DNA of 64,000 nucleotides from Vitrella brassicaformis CCMP3155. Its lineage: Eukaryota; Protista; Chromerida. Made by a program: the position numbers and the translations under genes. Positions 33,728 through 56,426 of the stretch are shown piece after piece (position 1 is the first letter of the stretch; each line of letters opens with the position of its first letter). Where the stretch lies: the NCBI GenBank assembly GCA_001179505.1, contig CDMY01000989.1:164310-228309 (forward strand). Direction: 5' to 3'. The notes beneath the pieces are model-generated. The model did not search any database. It was not told the DNA's origin and worked only from the letters and a program-made list of their open reading frames with translations.

Positions 33728-34449
33728 TCAGATGAGCAGTTGTTCGATGGTGTCCTTGAGGTCAGTGATCTGTGAGTTGAGGTTGCTGCCCTCCTTGGAG
33801 ATGACCGAACACGCTATCACCGGCCGAGTCACACCTGCCGCACGACCCAACGCCACCTTCGACCGCACAAAGACATACGGCACGTTCTGAACCCAACCCA
33901 CACACAGACACAGAGAGAAAGACAGAGAAGCAACCAACAGACGAACGAATGCACACCTCTCTCCTCTCCTTGCGTCTCCAGTTTGTTCTAGCTGCTTCTC
34001 TGCAGTTGCCTTGCTGAGTGGCTGACCTTGTCTTCGCACACAAGCGGCAAGTGCAGGAGGATCTCGAGAGGCTCCGCGTCGGCCGCAAGGATGATCAACT
34101 CGCTCGTCCCGCGATTCAGCGTCTTGGTGGCTGATGAATGGACGCACCGGAAGTCACAGACCATCACACACTCATCCCGTCGCTCAAGGAGTGTCTGTCA
34201 CCCATGCCGTATATCCATTCACAGCGTATGTACCTTCGTTTGCTCCCTTTTTGAGTTGCTTGTAGTTGACGGCCTGCTGCACGACATCGAGGATCTTCTT
34301 GGTGACGTCGGGGTTGGCCAGAGGATAGGCCTTGGGGTTCACCTGGTGGCCAAACAGAACAAACAGGTGAGGCAAACACATGCACATACATGCTATGCTG
34401 CGTGGATGTCCGCATTCACTGTGGCCTTTCTCACCTCCTCGTCATCCAT
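33728..34449 (-). CDS. SNU13: Snu13/15.5K (NHP2L1), L7Ae-family box C/D and U4 snRNP protein
   Basis: Spliced MDDEE|[36 protein letters not shown]|[35 protein letters not shown]|[37 protein letters not shown]. Confidence 0.97.
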
Positions 34450-37589: not shown

Positions 37590-40500
37590 TCACTTGACTG
37601 CGCTCTGTCCCAGGCCATCCATGTGGGGCTCTCCCTCCCCCTGCTGCTGTTGATGCAGGTCCTGAGTTTTCTTCCTCTTGAGTTCGTCCCTGGCCGATTG
37701 GACTACACGCTGAATCTCTGGCAGCGCCTGCCCACTCTCTTCCAGCAGCTCCAGGATCGATGTGTGCCGCCGGTCACTCACACGGACACTCTGCACGGAC
37801 AACACACAACACCTCATGGCATGTATGTTTCGGGGTGGGTGAATGAGCCCTTGAAGCTTACGTGCACGAGGTTAGCGAATCGTATCTTAGCCCGGATGAC
37901 CTTGAGCTTCTGTCTCGACACGTGCCTGCGCCAGTTGGTTTGTATGTTGATGATGGACACCAGATGGGCGCTGCGGTAGCGGGAGATGGTGCCGCACACC
38001 ATGGACACCTTTTTGCCCAACTCGACCCTCAACCATTCCCCTAGGGACGCCGGGACGGGCGTCTGCAGACTGTCAGACCAAGCAAATCAATGCGGAAACA
38101 AAGACACACACTTGTGTGAGCCATTTGCGTGTGCGCGCATCGGGCGATCTGTGTGCATACCAGCTGTCAGCCATTGCTTGTATGGTGTGGTAAAAAGAGG
38201 CCACATTGCCGTCGCCAATCATCTGCACGTTCAGCCTCTTGAAGAACGCCAGAACGTTGTCGCGCTGCCTGTGCTGCCCTGGCCCGTATCTGAACAGAGG
38301 GTCGCCCTTCCTGCGCAGTCCCATCGGCGCCGGCGTGGCCAGAATGAACAGCAGCACCTTGTCAAAAGGAAGCGCCATCGTGTAGTGCTTGTCCAGACAG
38401 AACCACAGATCCTTCAGACGTGCCAGGTCCTGCCTCCTCAGCTGGAGAGAGAGATGCCCGGCAGACGCCACACCACTGTTTGCGTAGGTGAAAGCCTCCA
38501 TCATGATGGCGATGAACAAATTGGTCATGAGGAAGGTGACGCAGAGGACAAACGCCACACCAACACGGATGCCACCACTGGATTCCCTCCTCTAATACAG
38601 TCCCACATCACCACTTGCCAGTCCTCACCTGAGTGACATTCACCGAAATGTACGCAGAGAGAGACCAAAGTGTCGTGGCACTTTTCCTGCGTCTGTGGGC
38701 TTGCGTTCTACCGCTGCCAATCTAAGTGAGCACCAGGAGGGACCTCTGAGATGTAAAGAACACAGCACGAACAAGGCATCGAGCGTCTGCCACACGAGGA
38801 ACAACATGCCTGAAAATTGGAGAAATTGAACTTCTCGTCGATGAAGTCGCCATCTCGGATACTCCCGAACATATTCATGGCCGAGATGGCGGCCGCACAG
38901 TATATCTGCATAGTGACACACGATCGAGCCGCACGCACCATCACATACGCCTTCCTCTCTGTATGGGCTCTGCGTACGCACCAGGAAGATCAACAGGGCG
39001 AAATTGCCCACACTGGGCAGCACCAAGAGCAAGGCGCTGAGGATGGATCGGACTGAACGAAGGAATGCCAACCTGACACAAGACAGAGACAGAAAGGAGG
39101 CAGTCTCTGGCTCATGAGTGCACTGCGATGTGCGTGTCTCACTCACTCTCCGAGAAAAGTAATGATCCTCAAACAGCAGAACGCGCCCAAACATCTGAAG
39201 TAATACGGCACGCCGAACTGCTCCAGCTGAATGCCGACGTAGCAAAGCAAGGCAAGGATCACGCACAGTTTCTCCGACCTGAAATGGAAACATATGACAC
39301 AGCATTCCACACAACTACATCACAAAGTGAGATGCGTATTCTTTAGTTGACGGACGCTGGTCTGAAGAAGGCTTTGGTGCCAGCGGAAGACCACTTGAGG
39401 GCAATCTCTACGAAGTAAATGACCGTAAAGAGGTAGTGCAGCCTGAACTGCTGCTCGGTAGTGCCTTCCTCCTGCCCCAGGTGAAAAGACGATAGCACAC
39501 TGATGTGGACGGTCACTAGTACGGCCATGAAGGCGCCGAAAGCATCGGAGAAGACGTATCGGCCCCACCATGCCACAGAGCCCAAGAGCACATCTCGCCA
39601 CTTGTCTTCATTGGGCATGAGCAGATGTTCCATTGTTTTGTACCACCGTCGCTGCTTCACCGTCATCAGGACGCGAAGCCGGTCTGATCGAAAAACACAC
39701 AGACAGAGACAGTTTTGCCGAGAGGAGACACGCATCGCCGTGAGTGTCCTCACTTCTGTGCGCTCTTTTTTCCCTTTGAGCTTGGTATTGGTCGATCATG
39801 ACGGAGGCAAGGAGGTTGAGGACGATAAAAACCCCAAGCCAAATGAATAGCACAAAGAATAGGCTGGCAAACGGATTCGCCTCATGTTTGGGGCCCTTGT
39901 TGTAGCCTTCGATATCGATGGCACGGTACATGATGTCCGTCCAGGACTCAAGAAAGGCCACCTGCCACACACACCACAGGCACAAAGCTACGCACATCTC
40001 TTCACAACTCACCATACCTCAAACATCGCAGATGCTGCCCCGAAAAACGAATTAAAGTTGGGCCAGTGGTGCACCCACTCGCCTCCATATCTCTCACATT
40101 GATCTTTGTCCACCAGATCGTCGGGTGTGAGGCCCTCTAGGGGATTTGTCGGCGTAAAATCGTCGCCCAAAAGAGACAAGAGACCTTTGTCGCTCACGCC
40201 AATTGCACACTCGCCAAAACGGCCTGCAGACGCGGCGCAAGAGAAGTGGTGTGCTTCATTTGTTGTGCAGCGAATTGGCTGACCAATAAAGAAATGAAGA
40301 CCCAGCAATATGAACAGAAGGTACCTGCAAGGGGTCAATAATGCGAAATATCACACCATATTCTGCTATTGACACCATGCTTACGTCATAAGCACCAGTA
40401 GCAAAATATTCCCCGTTTTTCTTAAGCTTATCAGCACACACGATGTTGCTTTGCGGAGTCCATCCAGGTGTCGAATCATGCGGAAAGGCCGCATGCCCCT

Positions 40501-43500
40501 TGCGCCCACGACAACGTGTGCCTGTGTGTGTGCAGCCATCAAGCCCCGCACCCAATGTCTCTGTTTGCACCGGTTCTGTACTTATGCGTACAAATCTGAG
40601 CCAGCCAAGGCCAATCTTCTCTTGCATCGCCGATATTTCCTCGGCCGCCACATCGTGGCTGCTGTCTGCGAAGATGGACGCAGTAGGAACGATAGCGAAT
40701 GTGACATAGTAACATGTGATCAAATCCACCCAGGCTGCAGAAATGGTGCCCAGAATGTTGAAATAGAAAGAGTGCCTGGCCCTCATCATCGAGCTCACCG
40801 ATGAGGGTCATGACGGCGTCAAAAATGTTGAAGCCAGAACGGAAATAGCTGTCGGGCTCTTTCCACATCCCGTAGATCCATACTTTGACGCCGATGTCCA
40901 CGGTAAAGAAGGGAACGAACAGTGTATCTGCGGCTGCATATAGGTACTGCATGCAACCATATATAAGAATACGGGCCCTCATTGTACGAGAAGATATGAT
41001 CGCTTAGTTTTTTCTACACGCACCTGCATGGCCCAAAGAGCGAAGAAGCCCTCACTATGGTTGGCGTCAGAGGCAGCTACGATGACGTGAAGCAGCAGCG
41101 TAATGTAATATAAACGCCAGTACCACCTGCTGCTAACTAACATTCTCGCCTTCTGCCTTCTTCTTTGGGGTGCATCGCCAGCACTCTCACTGACGGCCGT
41201 CTGCAATGAAATCACTGCAGGCTGGTTATTGGCTGAGCCACTCCATGGTTTCGCCTCCTCCTTCATCCCAGTATCATCAATCGACATGGCGGCCTCAGCG
41301 GGCAGGCCGTACAGTGAGGCACCGTTTCTGTTGCTCCGTCTCGGCGGCCTGGTGGTTGTATGGACTGAGATGCCAAGCGATGCAGCAGGGGCCGAGGGAT
41401 ATTTCCCAAGATCTTTGTCTGTGCAGCTTTTGAGCCGTTTGATTTGCCGGAGAGTAAGCGGATCCCAGTAGAGAAGAGTCTGGAAGCGGCTCGGTATGCC
41501 CGTCTCGGTCTTCTTACCGCCGGTTAGCTCGTTTTCCGTCTCTATGGATTCTTTTGCCGGTATCGTGCCCGCTGTCCGACGCGCATAATAGTGCTCAATC
41601 AGGATGGCGAGGAAGATGTAAAGTAAGAGCCAGTTGTTGAACGCGAGAAGAAAAACAAAGTACAAGACAGCGGCAGACCCGCGGGCTGCAATCGCCTCGT
41701 ACATGATCTCGGGCCAGTCCTCTTCAGTGAGGACTTGAAATACCGTGAGAAAGGAGAAACCAGTGGTGTTGAAGTGGCTGCGGACAGATGGGGAGAACAT
41801 CTGATGAAGGGGTCATAAGATGAGAGACACACACAGAAGTGAGACTCACAGGAACTGACTTCTGTGCATATCATTCAGCTGTCCCCGCTCCATGCTTACG
41901 TTTCGAAAGAGCGCCGTTCCAAGGACTCCACTGCATACAAGATTCAACACCATCTATGGGTGGATGGGAGGGGGCATAGACACGCAATAAGACACTCTAG
42001 GGATGTAGGTATAAATGTGTCCGTTGCCCACCACCACAATCAATGCCGCAAGACCCTTGAGAGCCGCCCCCAGGTCGGTGAGGAGGTCTTTTAGGGCGCT
42101 AAGCCTTCGAAAATTCTCCAGGAGCCAATAATACACCCGAAGGATTCGAAATACTCCCATCGGTCGATAAACCCCAATCGGAATCACGAGGAGGACATCC
42201 AATTTATCCACCCAAGGCCTCTTGAAGATTGTCAGCCTCAGCGCACTGAGCCGCATCAGTGTGACGAAATAAAACTCGAGCTCAGCAAAGGACACGACTT
42301 CCTCCAGCGATTCTATGAAGCTTCGAGGCTGCTCATAATTATAGATGCCCAGGCAGATGACGTGGGCAAATGCAGAAGCGATGTCGAGGGCCTCAAAGAT
42401 GGGATGGCTGATGAGTGCAAAGAGAAAGCGACGGAATCCAGAATAGGACCACGCTCTGGCATCGAGCAGGGCAAGACGAAATCTGGCAATATCGATTATA
42501 TCCTCAAGTATTTTCAGCCGGGTCCTAAGGCGCTCGTAATCTCCCTCTGTCCGAGCTGTTGAGTGCCAGATGAACGATGCCCATTTTCTGTGTCACACCG
42601 GACATGATGGTGCGCGTGAAACAAACCTGAAACAAAGTCGCGATTAAGGTGACTTTGTATCCCCTCCAACTGGCCGCGAAGCTCCTCGTTCGATTTCTCG
42701 GCGATGTCACGTCGAGCCGCATCAAGCCTGCATGCAGATTCGGATCATGGGGGCCGGCGTCGGCAAAATATACGAAACTTACTTTGTTTGAAGCCTAATG
42801 CCCTCAACGACGTCGTCGTCAGGGGAGTGTCCCTTAAGTGTCTGTGTCTGCAGCAAAACGAGATATGCATCCATTCATGGCATTACTACCAGGCTGACAC
42901 AGGACAGAGAAGCTGTGTCTCATTGTGCCTTACGTTGCTGCTGCTCAGGAGTGCAAAAGCGTCGATGCTCTTCTCTCTCTGGCGTGTTGCAATCTTGTCA
43001 GTTTTTGCCACTGGCTCCTTATTGAAAATCCCAAAAAATGCCGGTTTACGCCTCCCGTCTGTGTCTCGTAAGCGAGCCAGCTCTCGTTGGACGAGCTCTT
43101 CTCGCAGCTTGTGATTTCTTTTCGCCTCGTGGATCATCGCCCGATTATTCTCAGCATAGGTGACAAAGACAGTCGCCGCAATCGAGGTGATTATGAAGAA
43201 GAAAGCTGCGCGAGACATGACAGCGACAAGGTTTTCGACACAGCAGCCTCTGTGTCCGTACCGATGAGGTAGAGCGGGATGAAATATAGGTAGATGGCAG
43301 GGTTGCCTGCACCGTCCTCGTACCATTGAAGGATATCTCTCCAGTTCTCCAAGCTTATAAAAACGAACAGAGTCAGCCACGCATCGGCTTGAATATGAAG
43401 ACGAATTATCCCCGACACAAGACAGAAATAGAAAGGATGCAGTGTCTGTCTTGTGTGTCTTGTCATTTCGTAAGAAAGAGCCCGACCTATTTGGTCCATT

Positions 43501-46500
43501 CCAATCAATCCTCCGTTGGGATTGATCCCGTACCACATGCAGCGCTAAGAACAACACATAGCAAGGCAGCAGAGGCTGAGATCTGGACTTCACACGTCGC
43601 TTTTCATACCTGTGTAGCTTCACAGCTGCTGCGTCGGATGGCCGACATCTTACCAGAGCACACGTGCTCCACATCCCATGTCGCTGTCGTTACATTGTTG
43701 GCAAATGCTGGCACACCGCCTCGCGTCGTGATCCCTAGCTGTACAAATTTACTTGCACCACCGCCTGTCTCCTCTTCTCCTGTGACTGTAACATTGCTGA
43801 GCCGATTCACAAGAATGCTGCTGATGCGATGCTGTAACGCCTCAAAGGACGTGACGAACCCAAGCAGGGCCATCTGAATCTCGGCAAGGACGCCAGACAG
43901 AGGGAAAAACCAAACGAAAGACGCCGTAGTCGACGCGAGTCTCCTCTCTGAAAACACAGAGAATGCTGCACCCGCCCTGAGCAGCTTGAAGAGGTCCTTC
44001 TCGTGGACTGGTGTGAGGAACTTCCTAAATCCTGGCGATGACGCTCCTCCGTAGGTGGACAGGTGTCCACCTACAGAAACTGTCTGGTTGTGGAAGAGAG
44101 TGACGCTTGTCCTCAGCCGCCACATGCGAGACGTCTCGTAGGGTAGAGGTGAGGAGGATCCTGCTGAAGAAGAGTCGCAGTAGTCTCGCGCGTTGAAAAC
44201 GAACCATGACTGGGCGATCTCTTCAGACAGCTGTTTAGCAGCGGAATGCTGATCGAACGCATGCAGCTGCGCCACAGCACGGACGACGAAGAAGGGTGTG
44301 GTGGTGAGATTATTACATAGCTGCTGAGTCCCCGCCCTGGACATCGTTTGGTTCATCGGCGTCGCCCGTCTCAGCATTTCGGCTGGTGTATGGAGCTCAA
44401 AACTCACCTCCGCCCACAGCCCCACTGCCAAAGAGACAAGATGAAGAAGACGGAGATGCTTTCGTAGACACGAATGCATCTGTGTAGGTACTTTGCAGCG
44501 GAGGAAAGGACGTTGTCCCCCGCAGATCGTCCATGTGAGGCGGCGCTTCGTGCTCGACGAAGAAACGAGACATTGGAGAGGGAAGTTGCTCTGTCTCGGT
44601 TCCATTGTAGGCAAACATTCTCCCTCTCGACAGCCAGATGCCAGCGTTAAGCGTCGCAAACTGGTCAAGGGACTGAGGGTAATAGAAAGAAGCTTCAGCA
44701 GCGATGTCGGCAGCTGCTTGCTCGGCAGCGAGGAATGGATCGGGAAATCGAATGTTGTTCAGGAAAGAAGAAGACTCCCGGAGAAACATCATCACCTCAG
44801 ACGTGTTGGTTTCCTCATTCTTGACAGGTCCCTTCATGCGGACTCGCCCTTTTCCAGTCAATGTCTCGTTTGCTGCGTCCGTTATGGCGCAAAGCATCTC
44901 AAAGAGCGAAAAGTCTGGCGCCATCTGCAGTGATCGCCAAACGAAGTCGTCTGAAGCGAAAAAAGGTATTGGAAATGTTGGAAAGGTGAACGGAAATGAC
45001 ACAATTGCCGACCAGCGATCTCGGAGTCCCTGTCGACAACGGTGGTCCACTCGCCGTCTTCAACAGTCACTCGAATAGGAGGCAAGTCAAATATGGCTGG
45101 GAAGTTGATGGTGCCAAGAGGGGTAAAACCGTTGGGTGTCAACTCATAGCTAGTCGTTGCCTTGCACCTGCAGCAAGACACCAAAGAAGGTAGCGCGCGT
45201 CGCTGATTCCATTGCCCTTGAGCATATATATCATTTATGTTCCTCTAATACGCGTCAGTCTCACCTGTGCAACAAGAGTCCGCTGAACATGTGGATGCCT
45301 ATGATCCTGAGGGCGTAGATGACGAAGAGTGGACGTTGTGAACAAATATTGGACATCTTTTCATACCCAAATACGACGAACATCATGAGGGAGAGAAGAA
45401 GGACTTTCCACAGTTGTGCTGTAGAGGTTCCAACACAAGCCACAATCATCCGCGTATGAGGGATGTAGATAGAGAGCATGAAAGGTCGCCAGTTGAGCAG
45501 CACACGAAAACTCATCCACACGGGGGAAAGCCTATCGACATCAACAAACACCAGCTCACTTATTGTCTCAAGCGTGCCGTACATTCAATTGCTCACGTAC
45601 ATAAGGATCGTCCGCCAGAGGGCGTCATGGCTTTCATCTGTGTCAGCTGCTCTCTCTTTCCAGTCCATGAGGCTCATGCGATGCAAGTCCTCTCCCTCCA
45701 GAGATAGTCTCGAGGCGAAATTGTACACGATGCATGCCAGCACCAACTCAACGACGGAGACAAGGTACGCGGCAAAGAACGGCATCTCGTCTGCTCTGCG
45801 AAAAAAGCCTCCCTTTTCGCCCAGAAGGCCGAGGCTGACAACCTCGAGACATATCTTGACGGTGAGAAAGAAGAGGAAGATCGCGTTGATGGCAAAGCGC
45901 CTTTGGAGGTCGAATGGGTTTTGGGTGAGGACACACAGAAGATCCAGGGCGAAGCACGACAAAATGAAGAAATCCCTAGGGACACGACAGCAAAGGAAAA
46001 CAGACACTACGAGCAATAGAGCAACAGCCAAGAAAGTTTTTTTCTTCTTCTTCTTCACCACCAGCGAGCGATGAGCACTTTGAAGCACCTGAGGAAACAG
46101 AAGGAGCTGCAGGTGTGGAAAAAATGACCTTTGGCCAGCTTACCATTGCCTCGCTTTGTCCGTCATTTTCAAGCCAAACACCGAGGCGAGCTCAATCTGT
46201 GAGTCCCCTGGTGATTTGTCACTGAAAATGTCTGAGAAACCGGCGGCCGTCCTGCGCTTTGCCCGGAGATTCATGATAGCGGGACGGCGGTTTTGAGGAG
46301 TGGTTGACTTTTTCAGCCTTCTGGCCGTCCCAACGCGTGAGCGCCGCTTCAACCGCCTTTGCGCGGACCTCAGCTGATGAGAGGTAGAAAAATCATCCAT
46401 CGACGAAAACAGGACAAGACATATTACCTTGTTGTGCGTACCAGCTCTTTTTGGTAGTCATAGGCCGCGGCGGCTAGTTGATCGATTAGTCGACTAAGGC

Positions 46501-49180
46501 CCTGGTTCTTCGTGTTGACCGATGTCAACACTTCATGACACCCTCGTGCATGCTTGATCAACGCCAGAGTGTCCTGTGCAGCCAGCTCAGCCTGGGTAGC
46601 CTTGCCCGTCGAAAGGCTACCCACCTTGACCGTGCGGCGAAGGGCCGTCATCTTCCTGATCCTATCTGCCAGCCCGCTGATGGCCTTGTTCTTCATGTCT
46701 CCAGATGTGTTTGTCGTCCTCCTCGATTCTCCCCGCTTCGATGGAGCCGCACTCGATGACACGTCAACCATATAGTTGCTCACCCTCTGCTGGCTCTGCT
46801 TGGGGAACAGATGACCGCTGAACCAGCCCCGTATCATCGAACTGAGTCTCTTTCCAATCTCCCGCACCGAGCCTCTGACGCCTGTAGGAATCGATGCTCT
46901 TTGAGTTGCTGAGTTCTCATGAGCAGCTGGCAGAGACACAGGTGGCTGGCTTGGCGGCTGTAGCTGCTGAAGTCGTTGTGCGTCTCCGAAGGGAATGGGA
47001 GAAGAGCGGATGTACATGTATCTGTGCTGTCTTGTTAAGGCTGATACTCTTCTTGTCCTCGAGACCTTCACATGCGGGCCATCAATGTCAATCACGACCT
47101 CAGAAATGATACGTCTCTTTCTCTTCTTGCGGGGTAGAGTGAGGTTGAGCTCGTCTTCGGCAGGATCCTTTGTGAAATGATGATACTTGTGAGCGGCATA
47201 CTCTGCATAGCCGTTGCTGTCATCGTCCTCACTTTCGTCAGACCCCTCAGTGCAGCTGCCGTCGTCCTGCGACTCATCGTTTGGTATGGGGATCTCCAGC
47301 CATAGCTCCCCAACTGAAGCATCCTCGTCCTCACTGTGAGTTGTCGGCGGCTTGGCCATATGCATGATCTCTGCCAGCCTCATCTCAGGAGTGCGGCCTC
47401 GTGGTTATTCGTAGTCTGCTTGACGCCCTGCAGTGGGTGACTCTTCACTGCCCGTCTCTTCACTGCCCGAATAATATTGGTAGTCAGAAGAGGACTCGAA
47501 CGTGAAGTTTTCATAGGAAGGCGGCCGTCGATCTTGGGGCGGGAGGCGGGTGGTTAAGACCGGCCTGTCCTCGCCTGTCGGTGTGCGAGGGCTGAAGCTC
47601 TCCGACTGCTCGTCGTGCTCATCCTCTGATTCTTCTTCCTTCTCGATCAGATTTGCTGCCAAAGAGGGAAATTGAGAGGGGGTCGTCAGGGTCAAGCGTG
47701 CCGAGATCTGCTTGGCGGAGCTGCGTCTTGTGTCTTGTGAAGCGGCCGGGAAGAAGATGGAAGGCGACAACGGGCGTATTGTTTCTTGTGCAGCGCCTGC
47801 AGTGCTTCTCCGCTTCGTGGTTGGCTGCTGGGGTCTCTCAAACTGAATGGACGATCCCTGCGACGAGCGTCTCGCTGCCGAGACACGCCCACGCGCCTTC
47901 ACCAGGACAGGAGAGCCATCCGCGGGGCTCGACACCGGCTGGGTCTCGTCCACGGAATACGAATATGCCACCAGCTGATGCTGCCGTCTCCGCCAGCCTT
48001 GATACTCTCGGGTGAGACAGAACGAGTCAACGTCGCAAGGGAAACGGCGACTCTCAAGGTGCACGTGCTGTGGCAAGACGGACCCCCTCCGCCTCGGTTG
48101 CTCGACAGTCAGCAGGAACGCAAAGGGAGATTGGCTGTCTTGCTGCTCTCCCATTGCCAGGCGCATCAGGTCGACGTCGAAGATGAAAAACGGCAGATTG
48201 CCATGAAAGGGGCGAGGCCCGCCGAAGAGCCTGTCATGCCGCTTCCTGGCCTTGTATCGAAGCACCTCACCAAGCTGCACCCACAGCTCTAGAATGGCAT
48301 AGAGCCTTCGATATGCAGCCCCGTAAAGCGCCGTCACCATCACAGGCAAATCGGGGGCTGCAGGCAGGGTGCTCGACTGAGAGTTACTGGGCGGAGAGGC
48401 GATTTGGAAGGCGAAGAGGACGGCGATGGGCCGGTGCATGCGAGTGAAAGGGAAGGCACCGATATACTCACGGGAATGAAGATCCAGCTGTACAAGGAAT
48501 GACAGCATATGTGGCTTTTTGTGGCATGTGCATTTTCATCGATATGTGTCGTACCGCCCATGTAGCTTGATTGGACATTGTGCTGAGAAACTCAAGGAGT
48601 GTCGGCCCAACCAAGGGCACAGCAACCAGACAGAACAGCCATGGAGCGCACAACGGCACCACGAGGGGCATGGCCAGGAGAGAAAGGATAGATGGGGAAA
48701 GCGGCGGCTCAGAATCTGGGTTGGGATACGCTGCAGTGGCAGCTGCCAACTCGGCATCGATGGCAGCATCGCCTGGAGCGCCGTTCAGCCACTGCAGATT
48801 CAGTGCAGAAGCATCCAACCCAAGCAGATCTGTCTGTCAAGATCTGTCTGCCATACCAAGTACTGCAGATGCAGTGCGAACTCCTCCTCATCCAGGCAGC
48901 CGCTGTGTCGCTCGAGAAAGGGTCCCACTCCGCTCGAGAATGTATCGCAGAAGAGATCCTTGTCCAGCACGTGTCGGGCAAACACGAAGCAGAAGGCCCT
49001 GTCTTCAACCACAGATGGGCGAAGCACAGGCGCCGCCGTCCGCACATCAGCTGTGCCTGACAGCCGCGCAAAGAAATGCATCAACACACAGATGTAAGAT
49101 GTGTGTATGGCTCCATAACTGCCTGCTTGTACCTTCTTCGAGGGACGAATCCTCATCGCCTTCTCTATCTGCCGCAGGTC
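37590..49180 (-). CDS. Four-domain (4x6TM) voltage-gated Ca2+-channel-like alpha subunit with very large extensions; contains two in-frame stops, so it may be a pseudogene or null allele
   Basis: P-loops: ISLENW (I, ~43345), LTEEDW (II, ~41720), AFLESW (III, ~39945), GSGEDW (IV, ~38620). S6 segments: LLLYIFLAILIE, LNLLASVMID, MTNLFIAIMME. C-terminal IQ-like IINIQTNWRRH. The 5' limit is uncertain (49180 up to ~49450). Confidence 0.85.
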
Positions 49181-49801
49181 CCCTCGCACGGCTCTCCATC
49201 TCCCGCAGGTTCCAGGAACCCATCATGACCACAAATTCAACGTCTCAAATGATTCTCCCTAGTATGTTTGGAGTACTAGTATCTTCGACCGCCAGCCAAA
49301 CATGAGGGTCTGCTGTGCGACAGGGAGGCACAGCACGCCGAACGGGCCAAACCGACGTTCTTCTGATGGTATCTTATGGGGGGCTTGTGGGGGCCCGACG
49401 ATCTCCGAGTCTCGTGTGAGCACCTCGTGAGCCTCGAGCAAGTGAGTTGAAGTCGATATATGGATGCGAATTCTTCCATTCACCCATTCATTCATTCATT
49501 CATTGATTCCATCACTCAACATGCATGCAATGCCATGCATCATGCACAAGTTAGCAGGAACCGTCTGTGGGTGGCTGAGATCTCACCACCCACTTTCTTT
49601 CTGTACACTCACCCATCCACCCGCCCAACCGCGCGCACACACGCACGCCAAGCTGCTACCAGACACCGCCACTCGGCTAGTCAACAACCATTTCCCCACT
49701 GGTCGGTTGGCCGGTCGGCCGTCGGTCGATCTCCCCTCTGTCTGATCTGTCTCTCCATGCATCTGTCATGTCTGTCTGTCTGTCTGTCTGTCTGTAGCTA
49801 G

Positions 49802-51147
49802 CTACTCCTCGTCTGTGAAGTCCTTGGAGCTGTACTGCGTCACGGGCGACAGGCGCAGATCCGCCCACGTGCCTGTGATGCCAGAATACACATCCAAAAT
49901 CCTGATCAACCAACCAATCCACACACATGCGCAGCGCACAGAGAGAGTGGAAGGGCGCACAAAGCACAGCACAGCACAGCACGTGAGTGGGTACATGTAT
50001 ATGCGGTGCATGGGTTCCTGCTGGCTGGCTGCTGTACGTACGTGAGCAGATCGAGCTTATAGTGGACTCGTTTGTTGCCCCGGAACCCCTCACCACCACC
50101 GCCGCCCTTCTGCTGCTGCTGCTGCTGCTGCTGGTCATCGCCAGGCGTCCCGCCGGCCGCCACACCGATCTTGCGGAGGCCGTTGAGGACGCGCTTGACC
50201 TCCTGCCGGTCGCGGAAGTCGGGACTGTACACACAGATGACGTACATGGGGCCGCTGGGCGTCAGGGCGCACTTGGAGCAGTTGCCCAGCTGCCCCTTGC
50301 TGGTCGCCAAGGCCACACGACGCCACGCCTCATCTATCATGTCGTCACCTGCATTGCAATGCATGCATCAGCATCACACGGACGGACGGCAACACAACCA
50401 ACAAGACCCAGTAAGTAACATCAATGCATTGCAAAGAGGCCTTCCTTCCCTTGCTTCTGTCTTTCCTTCTCACCCACCGAAGTAGAGGAGCCACTTGCCA
50501 CTGACAAACTTGGTTTCGATGGCCAACTGCGTCAGTTGCTCGAGGGTCTCCTTGCGAATCACCCCCATCTTGGCCCTGGGCTGCTTGAGCTTCTCGCCAC
50601 AGTCGCGCAGAATGGCCTCGCCTCTGGCCTTGATGGCCTTGACCTCCTCCTCCGAGAACTCATGCTCAGGCCGGCCGCCGTCATGCCACACCCACCGCCA
50701 CCCGCGATGCAGCGTCTCGTGCACCTGATGGCTGGCGCGTGTGCTGCTGGGGTTGGCCAGGGGCAGATGCGATGAATGGTTGTCGCTGGGCGGGGCGGGA
50801 TGGGCCTGCTGCTGCTGCTGCTGATGGGTGCGGTCCGCCCCAGCGTTGATCTCCCTCATCAGCTGCATCGCCAGGGCATGGTCGGCATCCTCCTGGCGCT
50901 TGCGGCGACGCTCCTCGTCCGTCATGAAGGCATCCAGGTCCATGGCGGTGGGCTGGGAGGGACCTGCCGGCGCTGCGGCCGCTGCAGCAGATGCCGATGC
51001 ACTCACGGCGGGTGCGGTGGCGTCGGCTGTGGTCTTGGCGGCCTTGGCCTCCTTCTCGCCCTCCTCCTTGCGCTTCAGGTACTCCTCATTTTTGCGCTTG
51101 CGAATCTCCATCAGCTGCTGGTCCATGAGCGATGACTCCGCGTACAA
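49802..51147 (-). CDS. UPF0696/C11orf68 (Bles03, DUF1917)-like protein with an N-terminal extension; start codon uncertain
   Basis: FVSGKWLLY, IDEAWRRVALAT..GQL, VICVYSPDFRDRQEVKRV, HYKLDLLTY|LDVYSG..PVTQYSS match the family motifs. Stop TAG at 49802. Confidence 0.8.
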
Positions 51148-51629
51148 GTGATCACCACAGGCAGCTAAACAGCTCAGGTAGGAAGATACCCCTCGCGCGG
51201 TCTGTAAGCTGAGCGCGCAAATGGTGAAAAGGAAAGATCTCCGCTTCTCACGGGCTTTTGTGACCTTTCACGCGTCCATTTAGTCGACTCAAGTTGTACG
51301 TGAGGCAGTATGCACAGACCAGTTGGGCTNNNNNNNNNNNNNNNNNNNNNNNNNNNNNNNNNNNNNNNNNNNNNNNNNNNNNNNNNNNNNNNNNNNNNNN
51401 NNNNNNNNNNNNNNNNNNNNNNNNNNNNNNNNNNNNNNNNNNNNNNNNNNNNNNNNNNNNNNNNNNNNNNNNNNNNNNNNNNNNNNNNNNNNNNNNNNNN
51501 NNNNNNNNNNNNNNNNNNNNNNNNNNNNNNNNNNNNNNNNNNNNNNNNNNNNNNNNNNNNNNNNNNNNNNNNNNNNNNNNNNNNNNNNNNNNNNNNNNNN
51601 NNNNNNNNNNNNNNNNNNNNNNNNNNNNN

Positions 51630-52020
51630 CACACAAATGACATGAGGACAGCATCCATCCATCCATCCCTTCCTCCCTCTCTCTCCCGTTCTGTCGTGTG
51701 ATGCCTGTACCTTCGCCTTGGCCTCGTCGAGTTGGTGCTTGTCCGCCTTGAGCTGCTTGAGATGCGCGCGGGCAGAATCGTGAGCCTGACGCACACACAT
51801 TCATGCATTTGTGAGTGGTTGGGTTGGGTTGGTGGTTGTGAGTGTCGGTGTCTCACCTCTTTTGCAGCCTGGCAGTTCTTTCGTTCCTGGTCGATTTGAT
51901 TTTTGAGTATGAGTATCCGTGACTTGGCGTCGAGTACTTGGCCCTCGATCTTCTGCGTCTGCTCAGATGTCTTCTTGGTCTTGGCGTGGATCCATGTCCT
52001 TGAGCTGCTGCTGCTTGGCC
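51630..52020 (-). repeat. Duplicate of ~63610-64000 (fragment of the coiled-coil gene)
   Basis: Appears identical by eye from cacacaaatgacatgaggacag to ctgcttggcc. Confidence 0.9.
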
Positions 52021-54135
52021 TCGATGGACTCACGCACCATACGGATCGACTTGAGCATCGCCGCCTTGCTCTCCTCCTGACACCATACACACACACATAG
52101 ACGGATGACGGATGACACACAGACGACATGCAGGGAATGAGGATTTGTGACATCACCCGACCCGTTGCTTGAGCTTCTTCTCCTTCTGCACACGAACCTT
52201 CTCAATGCCATCTGATGATACAAGAGCAGTGCGTCAGGTGGCTTTTTGTGTAGGTGGTCTTGTTGCCTTCTGTGCCGACAAACACAAACGCCTGAAAGGC
52301 CATCTGTGCAAGGCTGGTTCTCGCCTTGGCAGTCATCTCGGGTTTGGGCCTGCTGCTGCTGCACCTTTCAGGCTGGTCAGCCCCAGCGTTGATCTCCCTC
52401 ATCAGCTGCATCGCCAGGGCATGGTCGGCATCCTCCTGGCGCTTGCGGCGACGCTCCTCGTCCGTCATGAAGGCATCCAGGTCCATGGCGGTGGGCTGGG
52501 AGGGACCTGCCGGCGCTGCGGCCGCTGCAGCAGATGCCGATGCGCTCACGCTGGATGGGCGGCGCCTGTTGTGGTCTTGGCGGCCTTGGCCTCCTTCTCG
52601 CCCTCCTCCTTGCGCTTCAGGTACTCCTCATTTTTGCGCTTGCGAATCTCCATCAGCTGCTGGTCCATGAGCGATGACTCCGCGTACAAGTGATCACCAC
52701 AGGCAGCTAAACAGCTCAGGTAGGAAGATACCCCTCGCGCGGTCTGTAAGCTGAGCGCGCAAATGGTGAAAAGGAAAGATCTCCGCTTCTCACGGGCTTT
52801 TGTGACCTTTCACGCGTCCATTTAGTCGACTCAAGTTGTACGTGAGGCAGTATGCACAGACCAGTTGGGCTGGCTCTGCTGCACAAACCCACTGCAGCAG
52901 AGGCTCCCCATGGATTCATCCATCTGCAGCGGAGATACAAGTGAGATCCACACACACGCCTGATCTCTCTCGTCGTGGCCTCGGTTCATGTGGTCTACTG
53001 TGTTTGTTGACGGCTGCAGGCATCCGGCACGGAGGAAGCGGCCGAAAAGGTGGGAGCCGCCGCGGACCAAGCCGCTGGACATCGAGCGGAAGATCAAGAA
53101 CCCCATTCTGCACGACCAGGCAAGTGGCAGTGGCCTCTTCCAGTTATGATGTCAATCAACGGATGAGTGGTCTGACTGACATGTGTCTGTCCGCAGAGGA
53201 TGGGCAGCGTCGAGACGCTCATGGAGGNNNNNNNNNNNNNNNNNNNNNNNNNNNNNNNNNNNNNNNNNNNNNNNNNNNNNNNNNNNNNNNNNNNNNNNNN
53301 NNNNNNNNNNNNNNNNNNNNNNNNNNNNNNNNNNNNNNNNNNNNNNNNNNNNNNNNNNNNNNNNNNNNNNNNNNNNNNNNNNNNNNNNNNNNNNNNNNNN
53401 NNNNNNNNNNNNNNNNNNNNNNNNNNNNNNNNNNNNNNNNNNNNNNNNNNNNNNNNNNNNNNNNNNNNNNNNNNNNNNNNNNNNNNNNNNNNNNNNNNNN
53501 NNNNNNNNNNNNNNNNNNNNNNNNNNNGCCCCAGCGTTGATCTCCCTCATCAGCTGCATCGCCAGGGCATGGTCGGCATCCTCCTGGCGCTTGCGGCGAC
53601 GCTCCTCGTCCGTCATGAAGGCATCCAGGTCCATGGCGGTGGGCTGGGAGGGACCTGCCGGCGCTGCGGCCGCTGCAGCAGATGCCGATGCGCTCACGCT
53701 GGATGGGCGGCGCCTGTTGTGGTCTTGGCGGCCTTGGCCTCCTTCTCGCCCTCCTCCTTGCGCTTCAGGTACTCCTCATTTTTGCGCTTGCGAATCTCCA
53801 TCAGCTGCTGGTCCATGAGCGATGACTCCGCGTACAAGTGATCACCACAGGCAGCTAAACAGCTCAGGTAGGAAGATACCCCTCGCGCGGTCTGTAAGCT
53901 GAGCGCGCAAATGGTGAAAAGGAAAGATCTCCGCTTCTCACGGGCTTTTGTGACCTTTCACGCGTCCATTTAGTCGACTCAAGTTGTACGTGAGGCAGTA
54001 TGCACAGACCAGTTGGGCTGGCTCTGCTGCACAAACCCACTGCAGCAGAGGCTCCCCATGGATTCATCCATCTGCAGCGGAGATACAAGTGAGATCCACA
54101 CACACGCCTGATCTCTCTCGTCGTGGCTTCCGTTC

Positions 54136-55322
54136 ATGTGGTCTGCTGTGTTTGTTGACGGCTGCAGGCATCCGGCACGGAGGAAGCGGCCGAAAAGGTG
54201 GGAGCCGCCACGGACCAAGCCGCTGGACATCGAGCGGAAGATCAAGAACCCCATTCTGCACGACCAGGCAAGTGGCAGTGACCTCTTCCAGTTATGATGT
54301 CAATCAACGGATGAGTGGTCTGACTGACATGTGTCTGTCCGCAGAGGATGGGCAGCGTCGAGACGCTCATGGAGGGCGAGCTCTTCACGCCCGAGTCGTG
54401 CAAGGCCCGGAAGCTCGCCATGCTCTTCAACCGCCTCCACTACTTCGGCTATGCCAACAAGATGCCCGAGCTGGTCCACCGATACGCCGACAGGGCGGTG
54501 CTGCTGGCGCCTGGCATGATGCCCAGGCAGTTTGCTCTGGTGCTCAACTCGCTGGCCAGGGCGGACCAACGGCACGATGGGCTGCTGGAGACCTTCGCGC
54601 GGCACATCCCTCCGCACCTCCCTGACTTCGTGCCGCAGGACCTCTCACTCACCTGCAACGCTTATGGCAAGCTGCTGCTGCTACCTGCGTCGAGTGACGA
54701 AGCACCTACTGGCCGGCAGGGCGGCATGCAGCACCAGAAGGGAAAAGGTGATGACGACCTTTCTCCTCTGGTAGCGGAGGAGAGCTCTGGGGTCTACTTG
54801 GGTCAGGGGCCGCCCCCCCGCCCCTCGACCTCTCCCCTCGTCAAGCGGCTCTTCAGGCGCATGGCGGAGGAGATCCCCCACAAGCTGCCCTACTTCGAGC
54901 CAAGGCACGTATCGTCCGTGGCCAACGGATACGCAAAGCTCAACTTCCGCGACCAGGTGCTGTTCGACGACATTGCCGATGAGGCCCTCTCACGGCTGGA
55001 GGAGTTCGGTGCCTGGCCGCTGTCCAACCTCATGCACGCTTTTGCGAGGGTGGGCTATGGCAAGCAACGCTTCTGGGTGGCGGCAATGGAGCGGGCGCAG
55101 GAGAGCCTCACAATGCAGGGGGCTGCCGGTGGTTATGGAGATACTGAGGCGAGCGACCATCCTCTGGCCTACGTGATGGTGACCTATGCGGTTGGCAAGG
55201 CGGGCATCCGGCAGGAGGCCTTCCTCGACTGGATGGCCGAGCGGCTGCTTGAGAGGCTGCCCGAGCTCCCACCCGAGACGCTGGGCGTCATTGTCAACGC
55301 ATATGCGAGGCTCGATCGGTTC
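54136..55322 (+). CDS. Helical-repeat organellar RNA-binding protein (HPR/OPR, RAP/FASTK-like), truncated by the gap
   Basis: An Arg-rich presequence exon (MWSAVFVDGCRHPARRKRPKRW..) and a GC-AG intron (54268-54344) precede repeats of type PRQFALVLNSLAR / PQDLSLTCNAYGK / PRHVSSVANGYAK / AWPLSNLMHAFAR / PETLGVIVNAYAR. Confidence 0.75.
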
Positions 55323-56426
55323 NNNNNNNNNNNNNNNNNNNNNNNNNNNNNNNNNNNNNNNNNNNNNNNNNNNNNNNNNNNNNNNNNNNNNNNNNNNNNN
55401 NNNNNNNNNNNNNNNNNNNNNNNNNNNNNNNNNNNNNNNNNNNNNNNNNNNNNNNNNNNNNNNNNNNNNNNNNNNNNNNNNNNNNNNNNNNNNNNNNNNN
55501 NNNNNNNNNNNNNNNNNNNNNNNNNNNNNNNNNNNNNNNNNNNNNNNNNNNNNNNNNNNNNNNNNNNNNNNNNNNNNNNNNNNNNNNNNNNNNNNNNNNN
55601 NNNNNNNNNNNNNNNNNNNNNNCGCTGGATGGGCGGCGCCTGTTGTGGTCTTGGCGGCCTTGGCCTCCTTCTCGCCCTCCTCCTTGCGCTTCAGGTACTC
55701 CTCATTTTTGCGCTTGCGAATCTCCATCAGCTGCTGGTCCATGAGCGATGACTCCGCGTACAAGTGATCACCACAGGCAGCTAAACAGCTCAGGTAGGAA
55801 GATACCCCTCGCGCGGTCTGTAAGCTGAGCGCGCAAATGGTGAAAAGGAAAGATCTCCGCTTCTCACGGGCTTTTGTGACCTTTCACGCGTCCATTTAGT
55901 CGACTCAAGTTGTACGTGAGGCAGTATGCACAGACCAGTTGGGCTGGCTCTGCTGCACAAACCCACTGCAGCAGAGGCTCCCCATGGATTCATCCATCTG
56001 CAGCGGAGATACAAGTGAGATCCACACACACGCCTGATCTCTCTCGTCGTGGCTTCCGTTCATGTGGTCTGCTGTGTTTGTTGACGGCTGCAGGCATCCG
56101 GCACGGAGGAAGCGGCCGAAAAGGTGGGAGCCGCCACGGACCAAGCCGCTGGACATCGAGCGGAAGATCAAGAACCCCATTCTGCACGACCAGGCAAGTG
56201 GCAGTGACCTCTTCCAGTTATGATGTCAATCAACGGATGAGTGGTCTGACTGACATGTGTCTGTCCGCAGAGGATGGGCAGCGTCGAGACGCTCATGGAG
56301 GGCGAGTCTTCACGCCCGAGTCATGGAAGTTCGTGTTTTCCCCCCCCCCGCCTCATCAGAGGAAGTATCTTTGCAAGGATCGCGACGTTCTATTGCTGAC
56401 CCCCATCCCCCCTTTTGCTCGGCCCC

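What the first reader, a model, noticed from the sequence alone, without database searches (positions are those of the whole stretch)
43490..45180. ~480-500-aa extracellular insert in the domain I S5-pore loop of the Ca2+-channel-like protein
Seen: between IS5 (IIGIHMFSGLLLHR, ~45265) and the pre-pore motif GINPNGGLIGMDQI..ADAWLTLFVFISLENW (~43510-43345), three long exons (~45170-45012, ~44952-44497, ~44430-43608) join in compatible phases with ordinary GT-AG introns. They contain several N-x-S/T sequons (NET, NTS, NGT, NQT, NLT, NVT) and scattered Cys. Established: this turret is usually under ~100 aa in animal Cav/Nav channels. Inference: an inserted extracellular domain, possibly ligand- or mechano-sensing or replacing an accessory subunit.
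Basis: partly seen in the sequence, partly recalled or inferred. Interest (0 to 1): 0.75.

Follow-up and report, generated by a model that had tools for sequence, protein, structure and literature searches.

The report
Giant orphan loop in algal channel
A calcium-channel-type gene of the alga Vitrella brassicaformis carries about 480 extra codons, unlike any known protein, in the loop that sits outside the cell above the pore; no RNA evidence was available, and the gene looks broken further downstream.

Summary
On the minus strand, three exons (45167-45013, 44950-44492, 44424-43610) lie between segment S5 of domain I and the conserved turret base and pore helix of a four-domain Cav-like channel. 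The organism is Vitrella brassicaformis CCMP3155.

The S5-to-pore-helix loop is 495 aa. It is 42-178 aa in 41 retrieved relatives and 16, 59 and 18 aa in this protein's other domains. The exons are open in the frames that splicing requires (chance about 8e-8), show in-frame codon bias, and are flanked by introns typical of the gene.

The insert is an orphan. Searches of 1.84 and 5.8 billion proteins, metagenome contigs, Pfam, NCBIfam, PDB sequences and ESM Atlas found nothing. Two AlphaFold runs without an alignment were unusable, so the fold is unknown.

Topology, an excess of N-glycosylation sites (8 against 3.1 expected, P=0.005) and a folded-type composition fit an extracellular domain. 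Sensor or accessory-subunit roles are untested.

Two caveats apply. No RNA data covered the locus. Domain IV carries an in-frame TAG and a 1-nt frame break, and the public annotation splits the gene there.

Verdict: a real coding feature and a new variant of a known channel type, of moderate interest.

The parts
45265..45306 (-). Exon coding the end of domain I S5 (IIGIHMFSGLLLH, first two bases of R587)
   Evidence: the piece matches Pfam Ion_trans positions 93-144
45168..45264 (-). Intron, 97 nt, GTGAGA...CAG, phase 2
45013..45167 (-). Insert exon a (P0001 residues 587/588-638; CKATTSYELTPNG...DSEIA)
44951..45012 (-). Intron, 62 nt, GTCGGC...CAG, phase 1
44492..44950 (-). Insert exon b (residues 639-791; 459 nt, phase 1-1, the only single insert exon that could be skipped without a frame shift)
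44425..44491 (-). Intron, 67 nt, GTACCT...CAG, phase 1
43610..44424 (-). Insert exon c (residues 792-1063; 815 nt). Its last ~20 residues already align to the Cys-containing turret base of Cav1.1
43835..43939 (-). Only strongly hydrophobic stretch of the insert (residues 954-988, Kyte-Doolittle peak 1.67). Probably a buried or membrane-dipping element, not a full span, because sequons and conserved turret Cys follow it
   Evidence: inference
43545..43609 (-). Intron, 65 nt, GTATGA...TAG, phase 0
43487..43544 (-). Exon d: conserved turret base RCMWYGINPNGGLIGMDQI, homologous to Cav1.1 [17 protein letters not shown]
43388..43486 (-). Intron, 99 nt, GTCGGG...AAG, phase 1
43262..43387 (-). Exon with the domain I pore helix, selectivity-filter Glu (E1096 in LENW, 43349-43347) and the start of S6
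38722..47359 (-). Whole public gene model P0001/CEM38610.1 (28 exons, 2239 aa); it ends at the in-frame TAG in the domain IV pore helix
38722..38724 (-). In-frame TAG at the position of the conserved Arg of the domain IV pore helix (RSLLVLT*IGSG)
38618..38626 (-). Domain IV selectivity-filter motif (G)EDW, reachable only by reading through the TAG
38079..38591 (-). IVS6 and C-terminal tail ORF (GVAFVLCVTFLMTNLFIAIMMEAF...), 1 nt out of frame with the GEDW exon. The public annotation starts a separate 249-aa model inside it at 38501

Best explanation
The stretch encodes a species-specific polypeptide of about 450-495 residues with no detectable relatives. It is built into the extracellular S5-to-pore-helix loop (the turret, L5-I) of domain I of a four-domain Cav-like cation channel of Vitrella brassicaformis, whose filter is E/E/E plus a fourth E beyond a stop codon. 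Shown: it is protein-coding sequence in the frames that splicing requires. It is part of the only public gene model. It lies between S5 and a turret base and pore helix that align to rabbit Cav1.1. It is about 3-10 times longer than the same loop in every retrieved relative. Inferred: it faces the outside (or the lumen), is N-glycosylated, and folds into a compact domain. That domain would be tethered at both ends (Cys588 directly after S5; Cys1047/1059/1065 at the conserved turret base) and so would sit as a canopy over the outer mouth of the pore. The most likely mode of action is that of an enlarged turret. It would shape ion or ligand access to the vestibule and stabilise or traffic the channel, in the way long Cys-bridged turrets, the K2P cap or bound ectodomain subunits do. 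It would not form part of the permeation path. This copy may no longer make a complete channel, because domain IV carries a stop codon and a frame break in the assembly.
For: Exons, phases and introns are defined. The reading is identical to CEM38610.1. The chance of 475 open codons is about 8e-8. In-frame codon bias is +0.15 to +0.20 per codon, against negative values in the other two frames of that strand. The flanks match Pfam Ion_trans positions 93-144 and 176-217. The whole protein matches Ion_trans at E=3.5e-92 in 5 stretches. The turret base and pore helix are 33% identical to Cav1.1 over 90 aa, E=1e-14. The loop is 495 aa, against 42-178 aa in 41 relatives and 16/59/18 aa in this protein's own domains II-IV. 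Skipping exons a+b+c (1429 nt) or a-d (1487 nt) breaks the frame, so with the annotated splice sites a short-turret product is not available (arithmetic). There are 8 sequons against 3.1 expected, P=0.005. All three exons fall on the folded side of the charge-hydropathy boundary, while the cytoplasmic N-terminus and linkers fall on the disordered side. The insert has no low complexity and no internal repeats.
Against: There is no transcript evidence. The five runs that hold the locus give colinear contigs without joints, so they look like genomic DNA. One possible RNA run of the same species label covers nothing but a 34-nt repeat. No homologue exists anywhere, so no conservation or covariation supports a fold or a function. 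AlphaFold without an alignment gave pLDDT 32.7 and 38.2. The ESM recognition score was low. The public model comes from Augustus; RNA-seq supplied intron hints genome-wide, but support for this gene is not documented (PMC4501334). The gene has a TAG and a 1-nt frame break in domain IV, and it is split into two models.
Confidence: 0.55

Rival explanations
1. Recently disabled gene. The locus is a young pseudogene (or a copy inactivated in culture), and the insert is a relic with no present function. It may have been tolerated only because the channel was already dispensable.
For: There is an in-frame TAG at the conserved Arg position of the domain IV pore helix. A 1-nt frame break separates the GEDW exon from IVS6, with no room for an intron. 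The public annotation splits the gene there. No RNA contigs cover the locus. Other follow-ups on this genome also report frame-broken channel-type genes (unchecked notes).
Against: 2232 codons and 27 splice-site pairs upstream, and 171 codons downstream of the breaks, are intact. The insert alone has a chance of about 8e-8 of staying open. Any decay must therefore be very recent, and the insert was kept as coding sequence until then. The two lesions could also be assembly errors or one allele.
Confidence: 0.2
2. Translated but functionally neutral expansion. This would be a fast-evolving, loosely structured spacer of the kind common in alveolate proteins, tolerated in a permissive extracellular loop and without a role of its own.
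For: There is no homologue even in the exhaustive search. In-frame codon bias (0.15-0.20) is lower than in the conserved membrane exons scored (0.24-0.37) and close to that of the disordered N-terminus (0.17). AlphaFold confidence is uniformly low. Only 7 Cys are present, unlike the Cys-rich animal turrets.
Against: The composition is not disorder-like: F+W+Y is about 10.5%, mean hydropathy is -0.13, and it lies on the folded side of the Uversky boundary, unlike the cytoplasmic linkers of the same protein. Sequence entropy is high and there are no repeats. The sequon excess suggests an exposed, processed surface. Low pLDDT without an alignment says nothing about disorder.
Confidence: 0.15
3. 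Gene-model artefact. Some or all of the three 'exons' are not in the mature mRNA, and the real transcript uses other splice sites to give an ordinary turret. The open frames would be chance or belong to something else.
For: No RNA junction evidence could be obtained. Exon b is frame-neutral (459 nt) and could be a cassette. Ab initio predictors favour long open frames.
Against: The open frames match the required phases at P about 8e-8. In-frame codon bias is present, with no comparable signal on the opposite strand. Intron sizes and donor types match the other introns of the gene, including the unusual GTCGG donor used twice. Joining IS5 directly to exon d or to the pore-helix exon breaks the frame. 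No family match suggests a nested gene.
Confidence: 0.1

Closest known systems
Four-domain voltage-gated Ca2+ channel alpha1 subunits (e.g. rabbit Cav1.1, P0011)
   Same: It has four Ion_trans repeats, and a Glu two residues before the Trp in the pore loops of domains I-III (LENW, EEDW, LESW) plus GEDW in domain IV. Loop lengths follow the long-short-long-short pattern. The turret base and pore helix of domain I are 33% identical over 90 aa.
   Different: The domain I turret is 495 aa instead of about 55. Overall identity is only about 24%. Pfam found no GPHH or IQ domain in P0001 or in the tail piece. Domain IV is interrupted by a stop and a frame break.
Long Cys-rich S5-P turrets of Cav3/T-type and Nav channels (PMC4436565)
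   Same: The loop and the concept are the same: domain I and III turrets are the longest and are proposed to build an extracellular structure over the pore that influences selectivity and toxin or drug access.
   Different: Animal turrets are roughly 100-130 aa and are defined by conserved Cys patterns. This one is about four times longer, has 7 Cys (most at the two ends) and shares no sequence with them.
K2P channel extracellular cap (M1-P1 linker, about 60 aa; PMC4436565)
   Same: The pre-pore linker is enlarged into a cap above the selectivity filter and restricts access to side portals. This is the nearest mechanistic analogue for a canopy.
   Different: It is a different channel family, helical, about 60 aa and dimeric. 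There is no sequence relation, and the fold here is unknown.
Cav alpha2-delta auxiliary subunit (VWA + Cache ectodomain)
   Same: It is a large glycosylated ectodomain sitting on the extracellular loops of alpha1.
   Different: It is a separate polypeptide. No VWA, Cache or any other Pfam domain is detectable in the insert. The analogy rests on position only.
Polycystin/TOP domain of TRPP and the luminal domain of TRPML channels (from general knowledge, not tested here)
   Same: A folded extracellular domain of about 200 aa is encoded within a channel subunit and forms a cap over the pore.
   Different: It is inserted between S1 and S2, not S5 and the pore helix. It has a defined, conserved fold and family. 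The insert here has no PKD_channel match.

Membership tests
[quoted passage not shown] | Four tandem 6-TM Ion_trans repeats in one polypeptide | tested here: met
   Pfam PF00520 at E=3.5e-92 in 5 stretches. Domain I is split in two by the insert and domain IV is cut at the model's end. IVS6 lies in the next ORF.
[quoted passage not shown] | A pore loop with a selectivity-filter residue in each of the four domains | tested here: inconclusive
   E1096, E1490 and E1952 are present in domains I-III. The domain IV GEDW is present in the DNA but lies behind an in-frame TAG and before a frame break.
[quoted passage not shown] | S4 segments with Arg/Lys at every third position | tested here: inconclusive
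   By eye in P0001, domains II (RPMGVFRILRV) and III (RGMRPFRMIRHLDGLRK) show the pattern. Domains I and IV are charge-poor. This was not analysed formally.
High-voltage-activated Cav1/Cav2 | C-terminal GPHH and IQ modules (and an AID in the I-II linker) | tested here: not met
   PF16905 and PF08763 are found in the animal hits and PF16905 also in several metagenomic hits, but not in P0001 or the tail ORF. The AID was not examined.
Cys-rich extended turrets of Cav3/Nav | A conserved pattern of core cysteines within a domain I S5-P loop of about 100 aa | tested here: inconclusive
   Cys at the loop base (1047, 1059, 1065) partly align with the Cav1.1 Cys. The intervening ~450 aa have only 3 Cys and no similarity.
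Known extracellular or accessory domains (VWA, Cache, PKD/TOP, lectins, Ig, etc.) | A significant match of the insert to a curated family or a solved structure | tested here: not met
   Pfam: 0 families for the whole insert at E up to 10 and, exon by exon at E up to 1, only DUF5107 at E=0.11, below its cut-off. NCBIfam: nothing below E 0.19. PDB sequences: best E 1.5. ESM Atlas: no usable hit.

The most novel reading that the evidence does not exclude
The insert is a self-contained ectodomain with a new fold, fused into the pore turret of a protist Cav-like channel. It would act as a built-in sensor or auxiliary subunit, for example gating or tuning Ca2+ entry in response to an external ligand, surface contact or ionic conditions. 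That would be an architecture not described for any four-domain channel.
Probability: 0.2. Interest if true: 0.7.

Novelty: new variant of a known kind. Interest (0 to 1): 0.4.

Why it matters
The turrets of four-domain channels are known to tune selectivity, toxin access and subunit binding, but they are short in every studied case. A folded domain of about 450 aa placed directly over the outer vestibule would be a natural experiment in how much the extracellular face of a Cav/Nav-type pore can carry. It could also reveal a way to couple an external signal to Ca2+ entry in the free-living relatives of apicomplexan parasites, whose Ca2+ entry channels are poorly understood. If instead the gene is a recently broken copy, or the insert is neutral, the finding is mainly a caution about an annotated protein (CEM38610.1) that is truncated in domain IV.

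Tried and rejected
- **RNA evidence.** The run search found only DNA-like holders. Laying four runs on 42500-46500 gave colinear contigs and no joints. The one possible RNA run touched only a 34-nt repeat. Both tools were then at their caps.
- **Homologues of the insert.** The exhaustive HMMER search of exon c found only the protein itself. The word search of residues 588-1082 among long proteins found only the protein itself. The word search of exon c among proteins of 150-478 aa found nothing; it was meant to catch transcript-derived fragments. Metagenome contig scans with exons c and b found nothing. Proteins of about 480-1230 aa were not covered by any word search.
- **Family and structure look-ups.** Pfam, NCBIfam, PDB sequences and ESM Atlas gave nothing.
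- **AlphaFold2.** The whole insert and exons c+d were run without an alignment. Mean pLDDT was 32.7 and 38.2. I ran no fold search on them because the matches would be meaningless.
- **Similarity to other long turrets.** The insert has no similarity to the longer turrets of other protist channels, and it has no internal repeats or second copy in the window.
- **Ideas rejected.** A nested gene on the plus strand is unlikely, because codon bias there is weak or absent. An intein or mobile-element ORF is unlikely, because no family matches. A transmembrane hairpin in the insert is unlikely, because there is only one borderline hydrophobic stretch and it is followed by sequons and the conserved extracellular turret base.
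- **Literature.** No paper mentions CEM38610 or A0A0G4H4M7. The survey of four-domain channels (PMC5824947) does not mention chromerids.
Full report
**What is there.** The window is from Vitrella brassicaformis CCMP3155, a free-living photosynthetic relative of apicomplexans (record CDMY01000989.1). A multi-exon gene for a four-domain Ion_trans channel runs on the minus strand from 47359 downwards (Pfam PF00520, E=3.5e-92, five matched stretches).

I then mapped the public protein found by the exhaustive search (P0001 = CEM38610.1 / A0A0G4H4M7, 2239 aa) back onto the DNA.
- IS5 ends at 45265.
- Exon a is 45167-45013, exon b 44950-44492 and exon c 44424-43610.
- Exon d (43544-43487) is short and conserved.
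- The pore-helix exon starts at 43387.

All 27 introns of the model are 55-99 nt and GT-AG (one GC-AG). The five introns around the insert are 97, 62, 67, 65 and 99 nt. Two of them share the unusual donor GTCGG.

I did not build or submit a joined model of my own. Searches used single exons by reference, or the public protein by its id. The only joining was a local check that each junction translates to P0001.

**Is it coding?** Four observations say it is:
- The three exons are open over 475 codons in exactly the frames that the splice phases demand.
- Stops occur at 3.4% in the five other frames of the same DNA, so the chance of staying open is about 8e-8.
- A codon model trained on the other exons of the gene gives +0.15 to +0.20 per codon in frame and negative values in the other two frames of that strand. 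On the plus strand no frame exceeds +0.11.
- Skipping a+b+c (1429 nt) or a-d (1487 nt) breaks the frame. Only exon b alone (459 nt), or c+d together (873 nt, which would remove the conserved turret base), are frame-neutral.

With the annotated sites, a short-turret channel therefore cannot be made from this gene.

**Where the insert sits in the protein.** The piece before the insert matches Ion_trans positions 93-144, and the piece after it matches 176-217. The end of exon c, exon d and the next exon align to rabbit Cav1.1 at 33% identity over 90 aa (E=1e-14). Vitrella SGKMSAIRRSSCEATQRCMWYGINPNGGLIGMDQIADAWLTLFVFISLENW aligns with Cav1.1 [45 protein letters not shown]. This puts E1096 at the selectivity-filter position.

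The true insertion is therefore about residues 589-1040, between the end of S5 and the conserved Cys-containing turret base. Measured from the S5 end to the pore-helix start, the loop is 495 aa. The same measure in 41 retrieved relatives gives 42-178 aa:
- animals: Cav1.1 55, an insect T-type channel 96, Nematostella 100;
- the one ciliate (Blepharisma): 44;
- also diplonemids, green algae, a foraminiferan and metagenomic sequences.

In this protein's own domains II, III and IV the loop is 16, 59 and 18 aa. Published comparisons describe domain I and III turrets as the longest, at about twice the 60-aa K2P cap in T-type channels (PMC4436565).

**What the insert is.** No relative was found by any route:
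- exon c against 1.84 billion representative proteins with HMMER: only the protein itself;
- residues 588-1082 against 5.8 billion proteins, long candidates: only the protein itself;
- exon c against candidates of 150-478 aa: nothing;
- exons c and b against metagenome contigs: nothing;
- Pfam, NCBIfam, PDB sequences and ESM Atlas: nothing;
- the longer turrets of other protist channels: no similarity.

Proteins of about 480-1230 aa fell outside the length ranges of the word searches. At over 50% identity they would also have been hidden behind P0001 in the representative library. That range is a gap.

Without an alignment, AlphaFold2 gave mean pLDDT 32.7 for the whole insert and 38.2 for exons c+d. 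I ran no fold search, because matches to such models mean nothing. The fold is unknown.

**What the sequence itself says:**
- It is not low-complexity (3.5-3.85 bits per 40 aa) and has no internal repeats.
- Mean hydropathy is -0.13 and F+W+Y is about 10.5%.
- All three exons lie on the folded side of the charge-hydropathy boundary. The cytoplasmic N-terminus and the I-II and II-III linkers of the same protein lie on the disordered side.
- There are eight N-x-S/T sequons against 3.1 expected (20,000 shuffles, P=0.005). The rest of the protein has 5 against 6.3 expected.
- One stretch (954-988) is hydrophobic enough to raise the question of a membrane span. Two sequons and the conserved extracellular turret base follow it, so a single span is topologically excluded. 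A buried or membrane-dipping element is more likely (inference).
- Cys588 follows S5 directly, and Cys1047, 1059 and 1065 lie at the base.

**Most likely mechanism.** The topology of the superfamily puts this loop outside the cell, or in the lumen if the channel is organellar. This rests on established knowledge of Cav/Nav structures, not on a test made here.

The best-supported reading is a glycosylated, compact ectodomain tethered at both ends above the outer vestibule: an enlarged turret acting as a canopy. It would influence access to the pore, and stability or trafficking. The long turrets of Cav3, the K2P cap and bound ectodomain subunits work this way.

Only the position and the coding status are shown. 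Folding, glycosylation and any effect on the channel are inferred.

**Caveats that lower the claim.**

First, there is no transcript evidence. The five runs that hold the locus give colinear contigs without joints, so they look like genomic DNA. A possible RNA run with the same species label covers only a 34-nt repeat. The public model comes from Augustus, and RNA-seq was used genome-wide as intron evidence. Support for this particular gene is not documented (PMC4501334).

Second, the gene looks damaged in domain IV:
- The public model ends at a TAG (38724-38722).
- Read through that TAG, the DNA aligns without gaps to the domain IV pore helix and filter of other channels. RSLLVLT*IGSG, then an 82-nt GT-AG intron, then (G)EDWQVVMWDCI, matches Blepharisma KAMVTLFRCSTGEDWPTIMYDCV.
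- IVS6 and the tail (38591-38079, 171 open codons, Ion_trans positions 211-237) are 1 nt out of frame with the GEDW exon. There is no room for an intron between them.
- The public annotation starts a separate 249-aa model inside IVS6, at window 38501.

These could be real lesions in a very young pseudogene or a culture-acquired loss, one allele, or assembly errors. Notes from other follow-ups on this genome also report frame-broken channel-type genes. I did not check those notes.

More than 2,200 codons and 27 intron boundaries upstream are intact. Any decay must therefore be recent, and the insert was maintained as coding sequence until then.

**Comparison and novelty.** The core is a member of the four-domain voltage-gated cation channel superfamily and is Cav-like by its acidic filter. 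It is not demonstrably Cav1/2 type, because no GPHH or IQ domain was detected.

The insert belongs to no known family. Its closest functional analogues are the long turrets of Cav3 and Nav, the K2P cap, alpha2-delta, and the S1-S2 cap domains of TRPP and TRPML. These are resemblances of position and presumed action, not of membership.

I found no paper on this protein, and the survey of four-domain channels does not mention chromerids.

I rate it a new variant of a known kind, with moderate interest (0.4). The size and position are striking to a channel specialist. Against that, it is a single-species orphan without RNA support, in a gene that may be broken.

Noticed in passing
window 38500-38810 (minus strand): Domain IV of the same channel gene has an in-frame TAG (38724-38722) at the conserved Arg position of the pore helix. 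It also has a 1-nt frame break between the GEDW exon (38626-38594) and IVS6 (from 38591). A splice from about 38729 to the AG at 38593-38592 would restore the frame, but it would delete the whole domain IV pore loop.
   Followed up: partly
L001:14859-15770 = window 38501-37590: The public annotation has a separate 249-aa gene model with no Pfam hit. It starts at the Met-Met inside IVS6 (IAIMMEAF), so the channel gene is split into two models at the break.
   Followed up: partly
window 47405-49226 (minus strand); L001:4134-5955: A 537-aa model with no Pfam match ends with TAA at 47407-47405. That is only 45 nt before the channel's annotated ATG, and in the same frame. The two models may be one gene, or the channel's true N-terminus may differ.
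   Followed up: partly
window 42557-42590: All Logan contigs of the three DNA runs laid break at this 34-nt element, which shows about twice the local depth and has alternative flanks. This points to a short sequence repeated elsewhere in the genome. It lies at an intron-exon boundary of the channel gene.
   Followed up: no
window ~50400-56300 (minus-strand frames): There are at least four tandem copies of a unit of about 1.1-1.9 kb. Each encodes the same peptides (HHNWKRSLPLAWSCRMGF...; KVTKAREKRRSF...MDQQLMEIRKRKNEEYLKRKEEGEKEAK...). They are interrupted by runs of N. This is either a tandemly duplicated gene or a poorly resolved repeat in the assembly.
   Followed up: no
window 33731-34441 (minus strand); L001:18911-19632: An ordinary Ribosomal_L7Ae-family gene, Snu13/NHP2-like by its sequence ([35 protein letters not shown]), lies downstream of the channel.
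   Followed up: no
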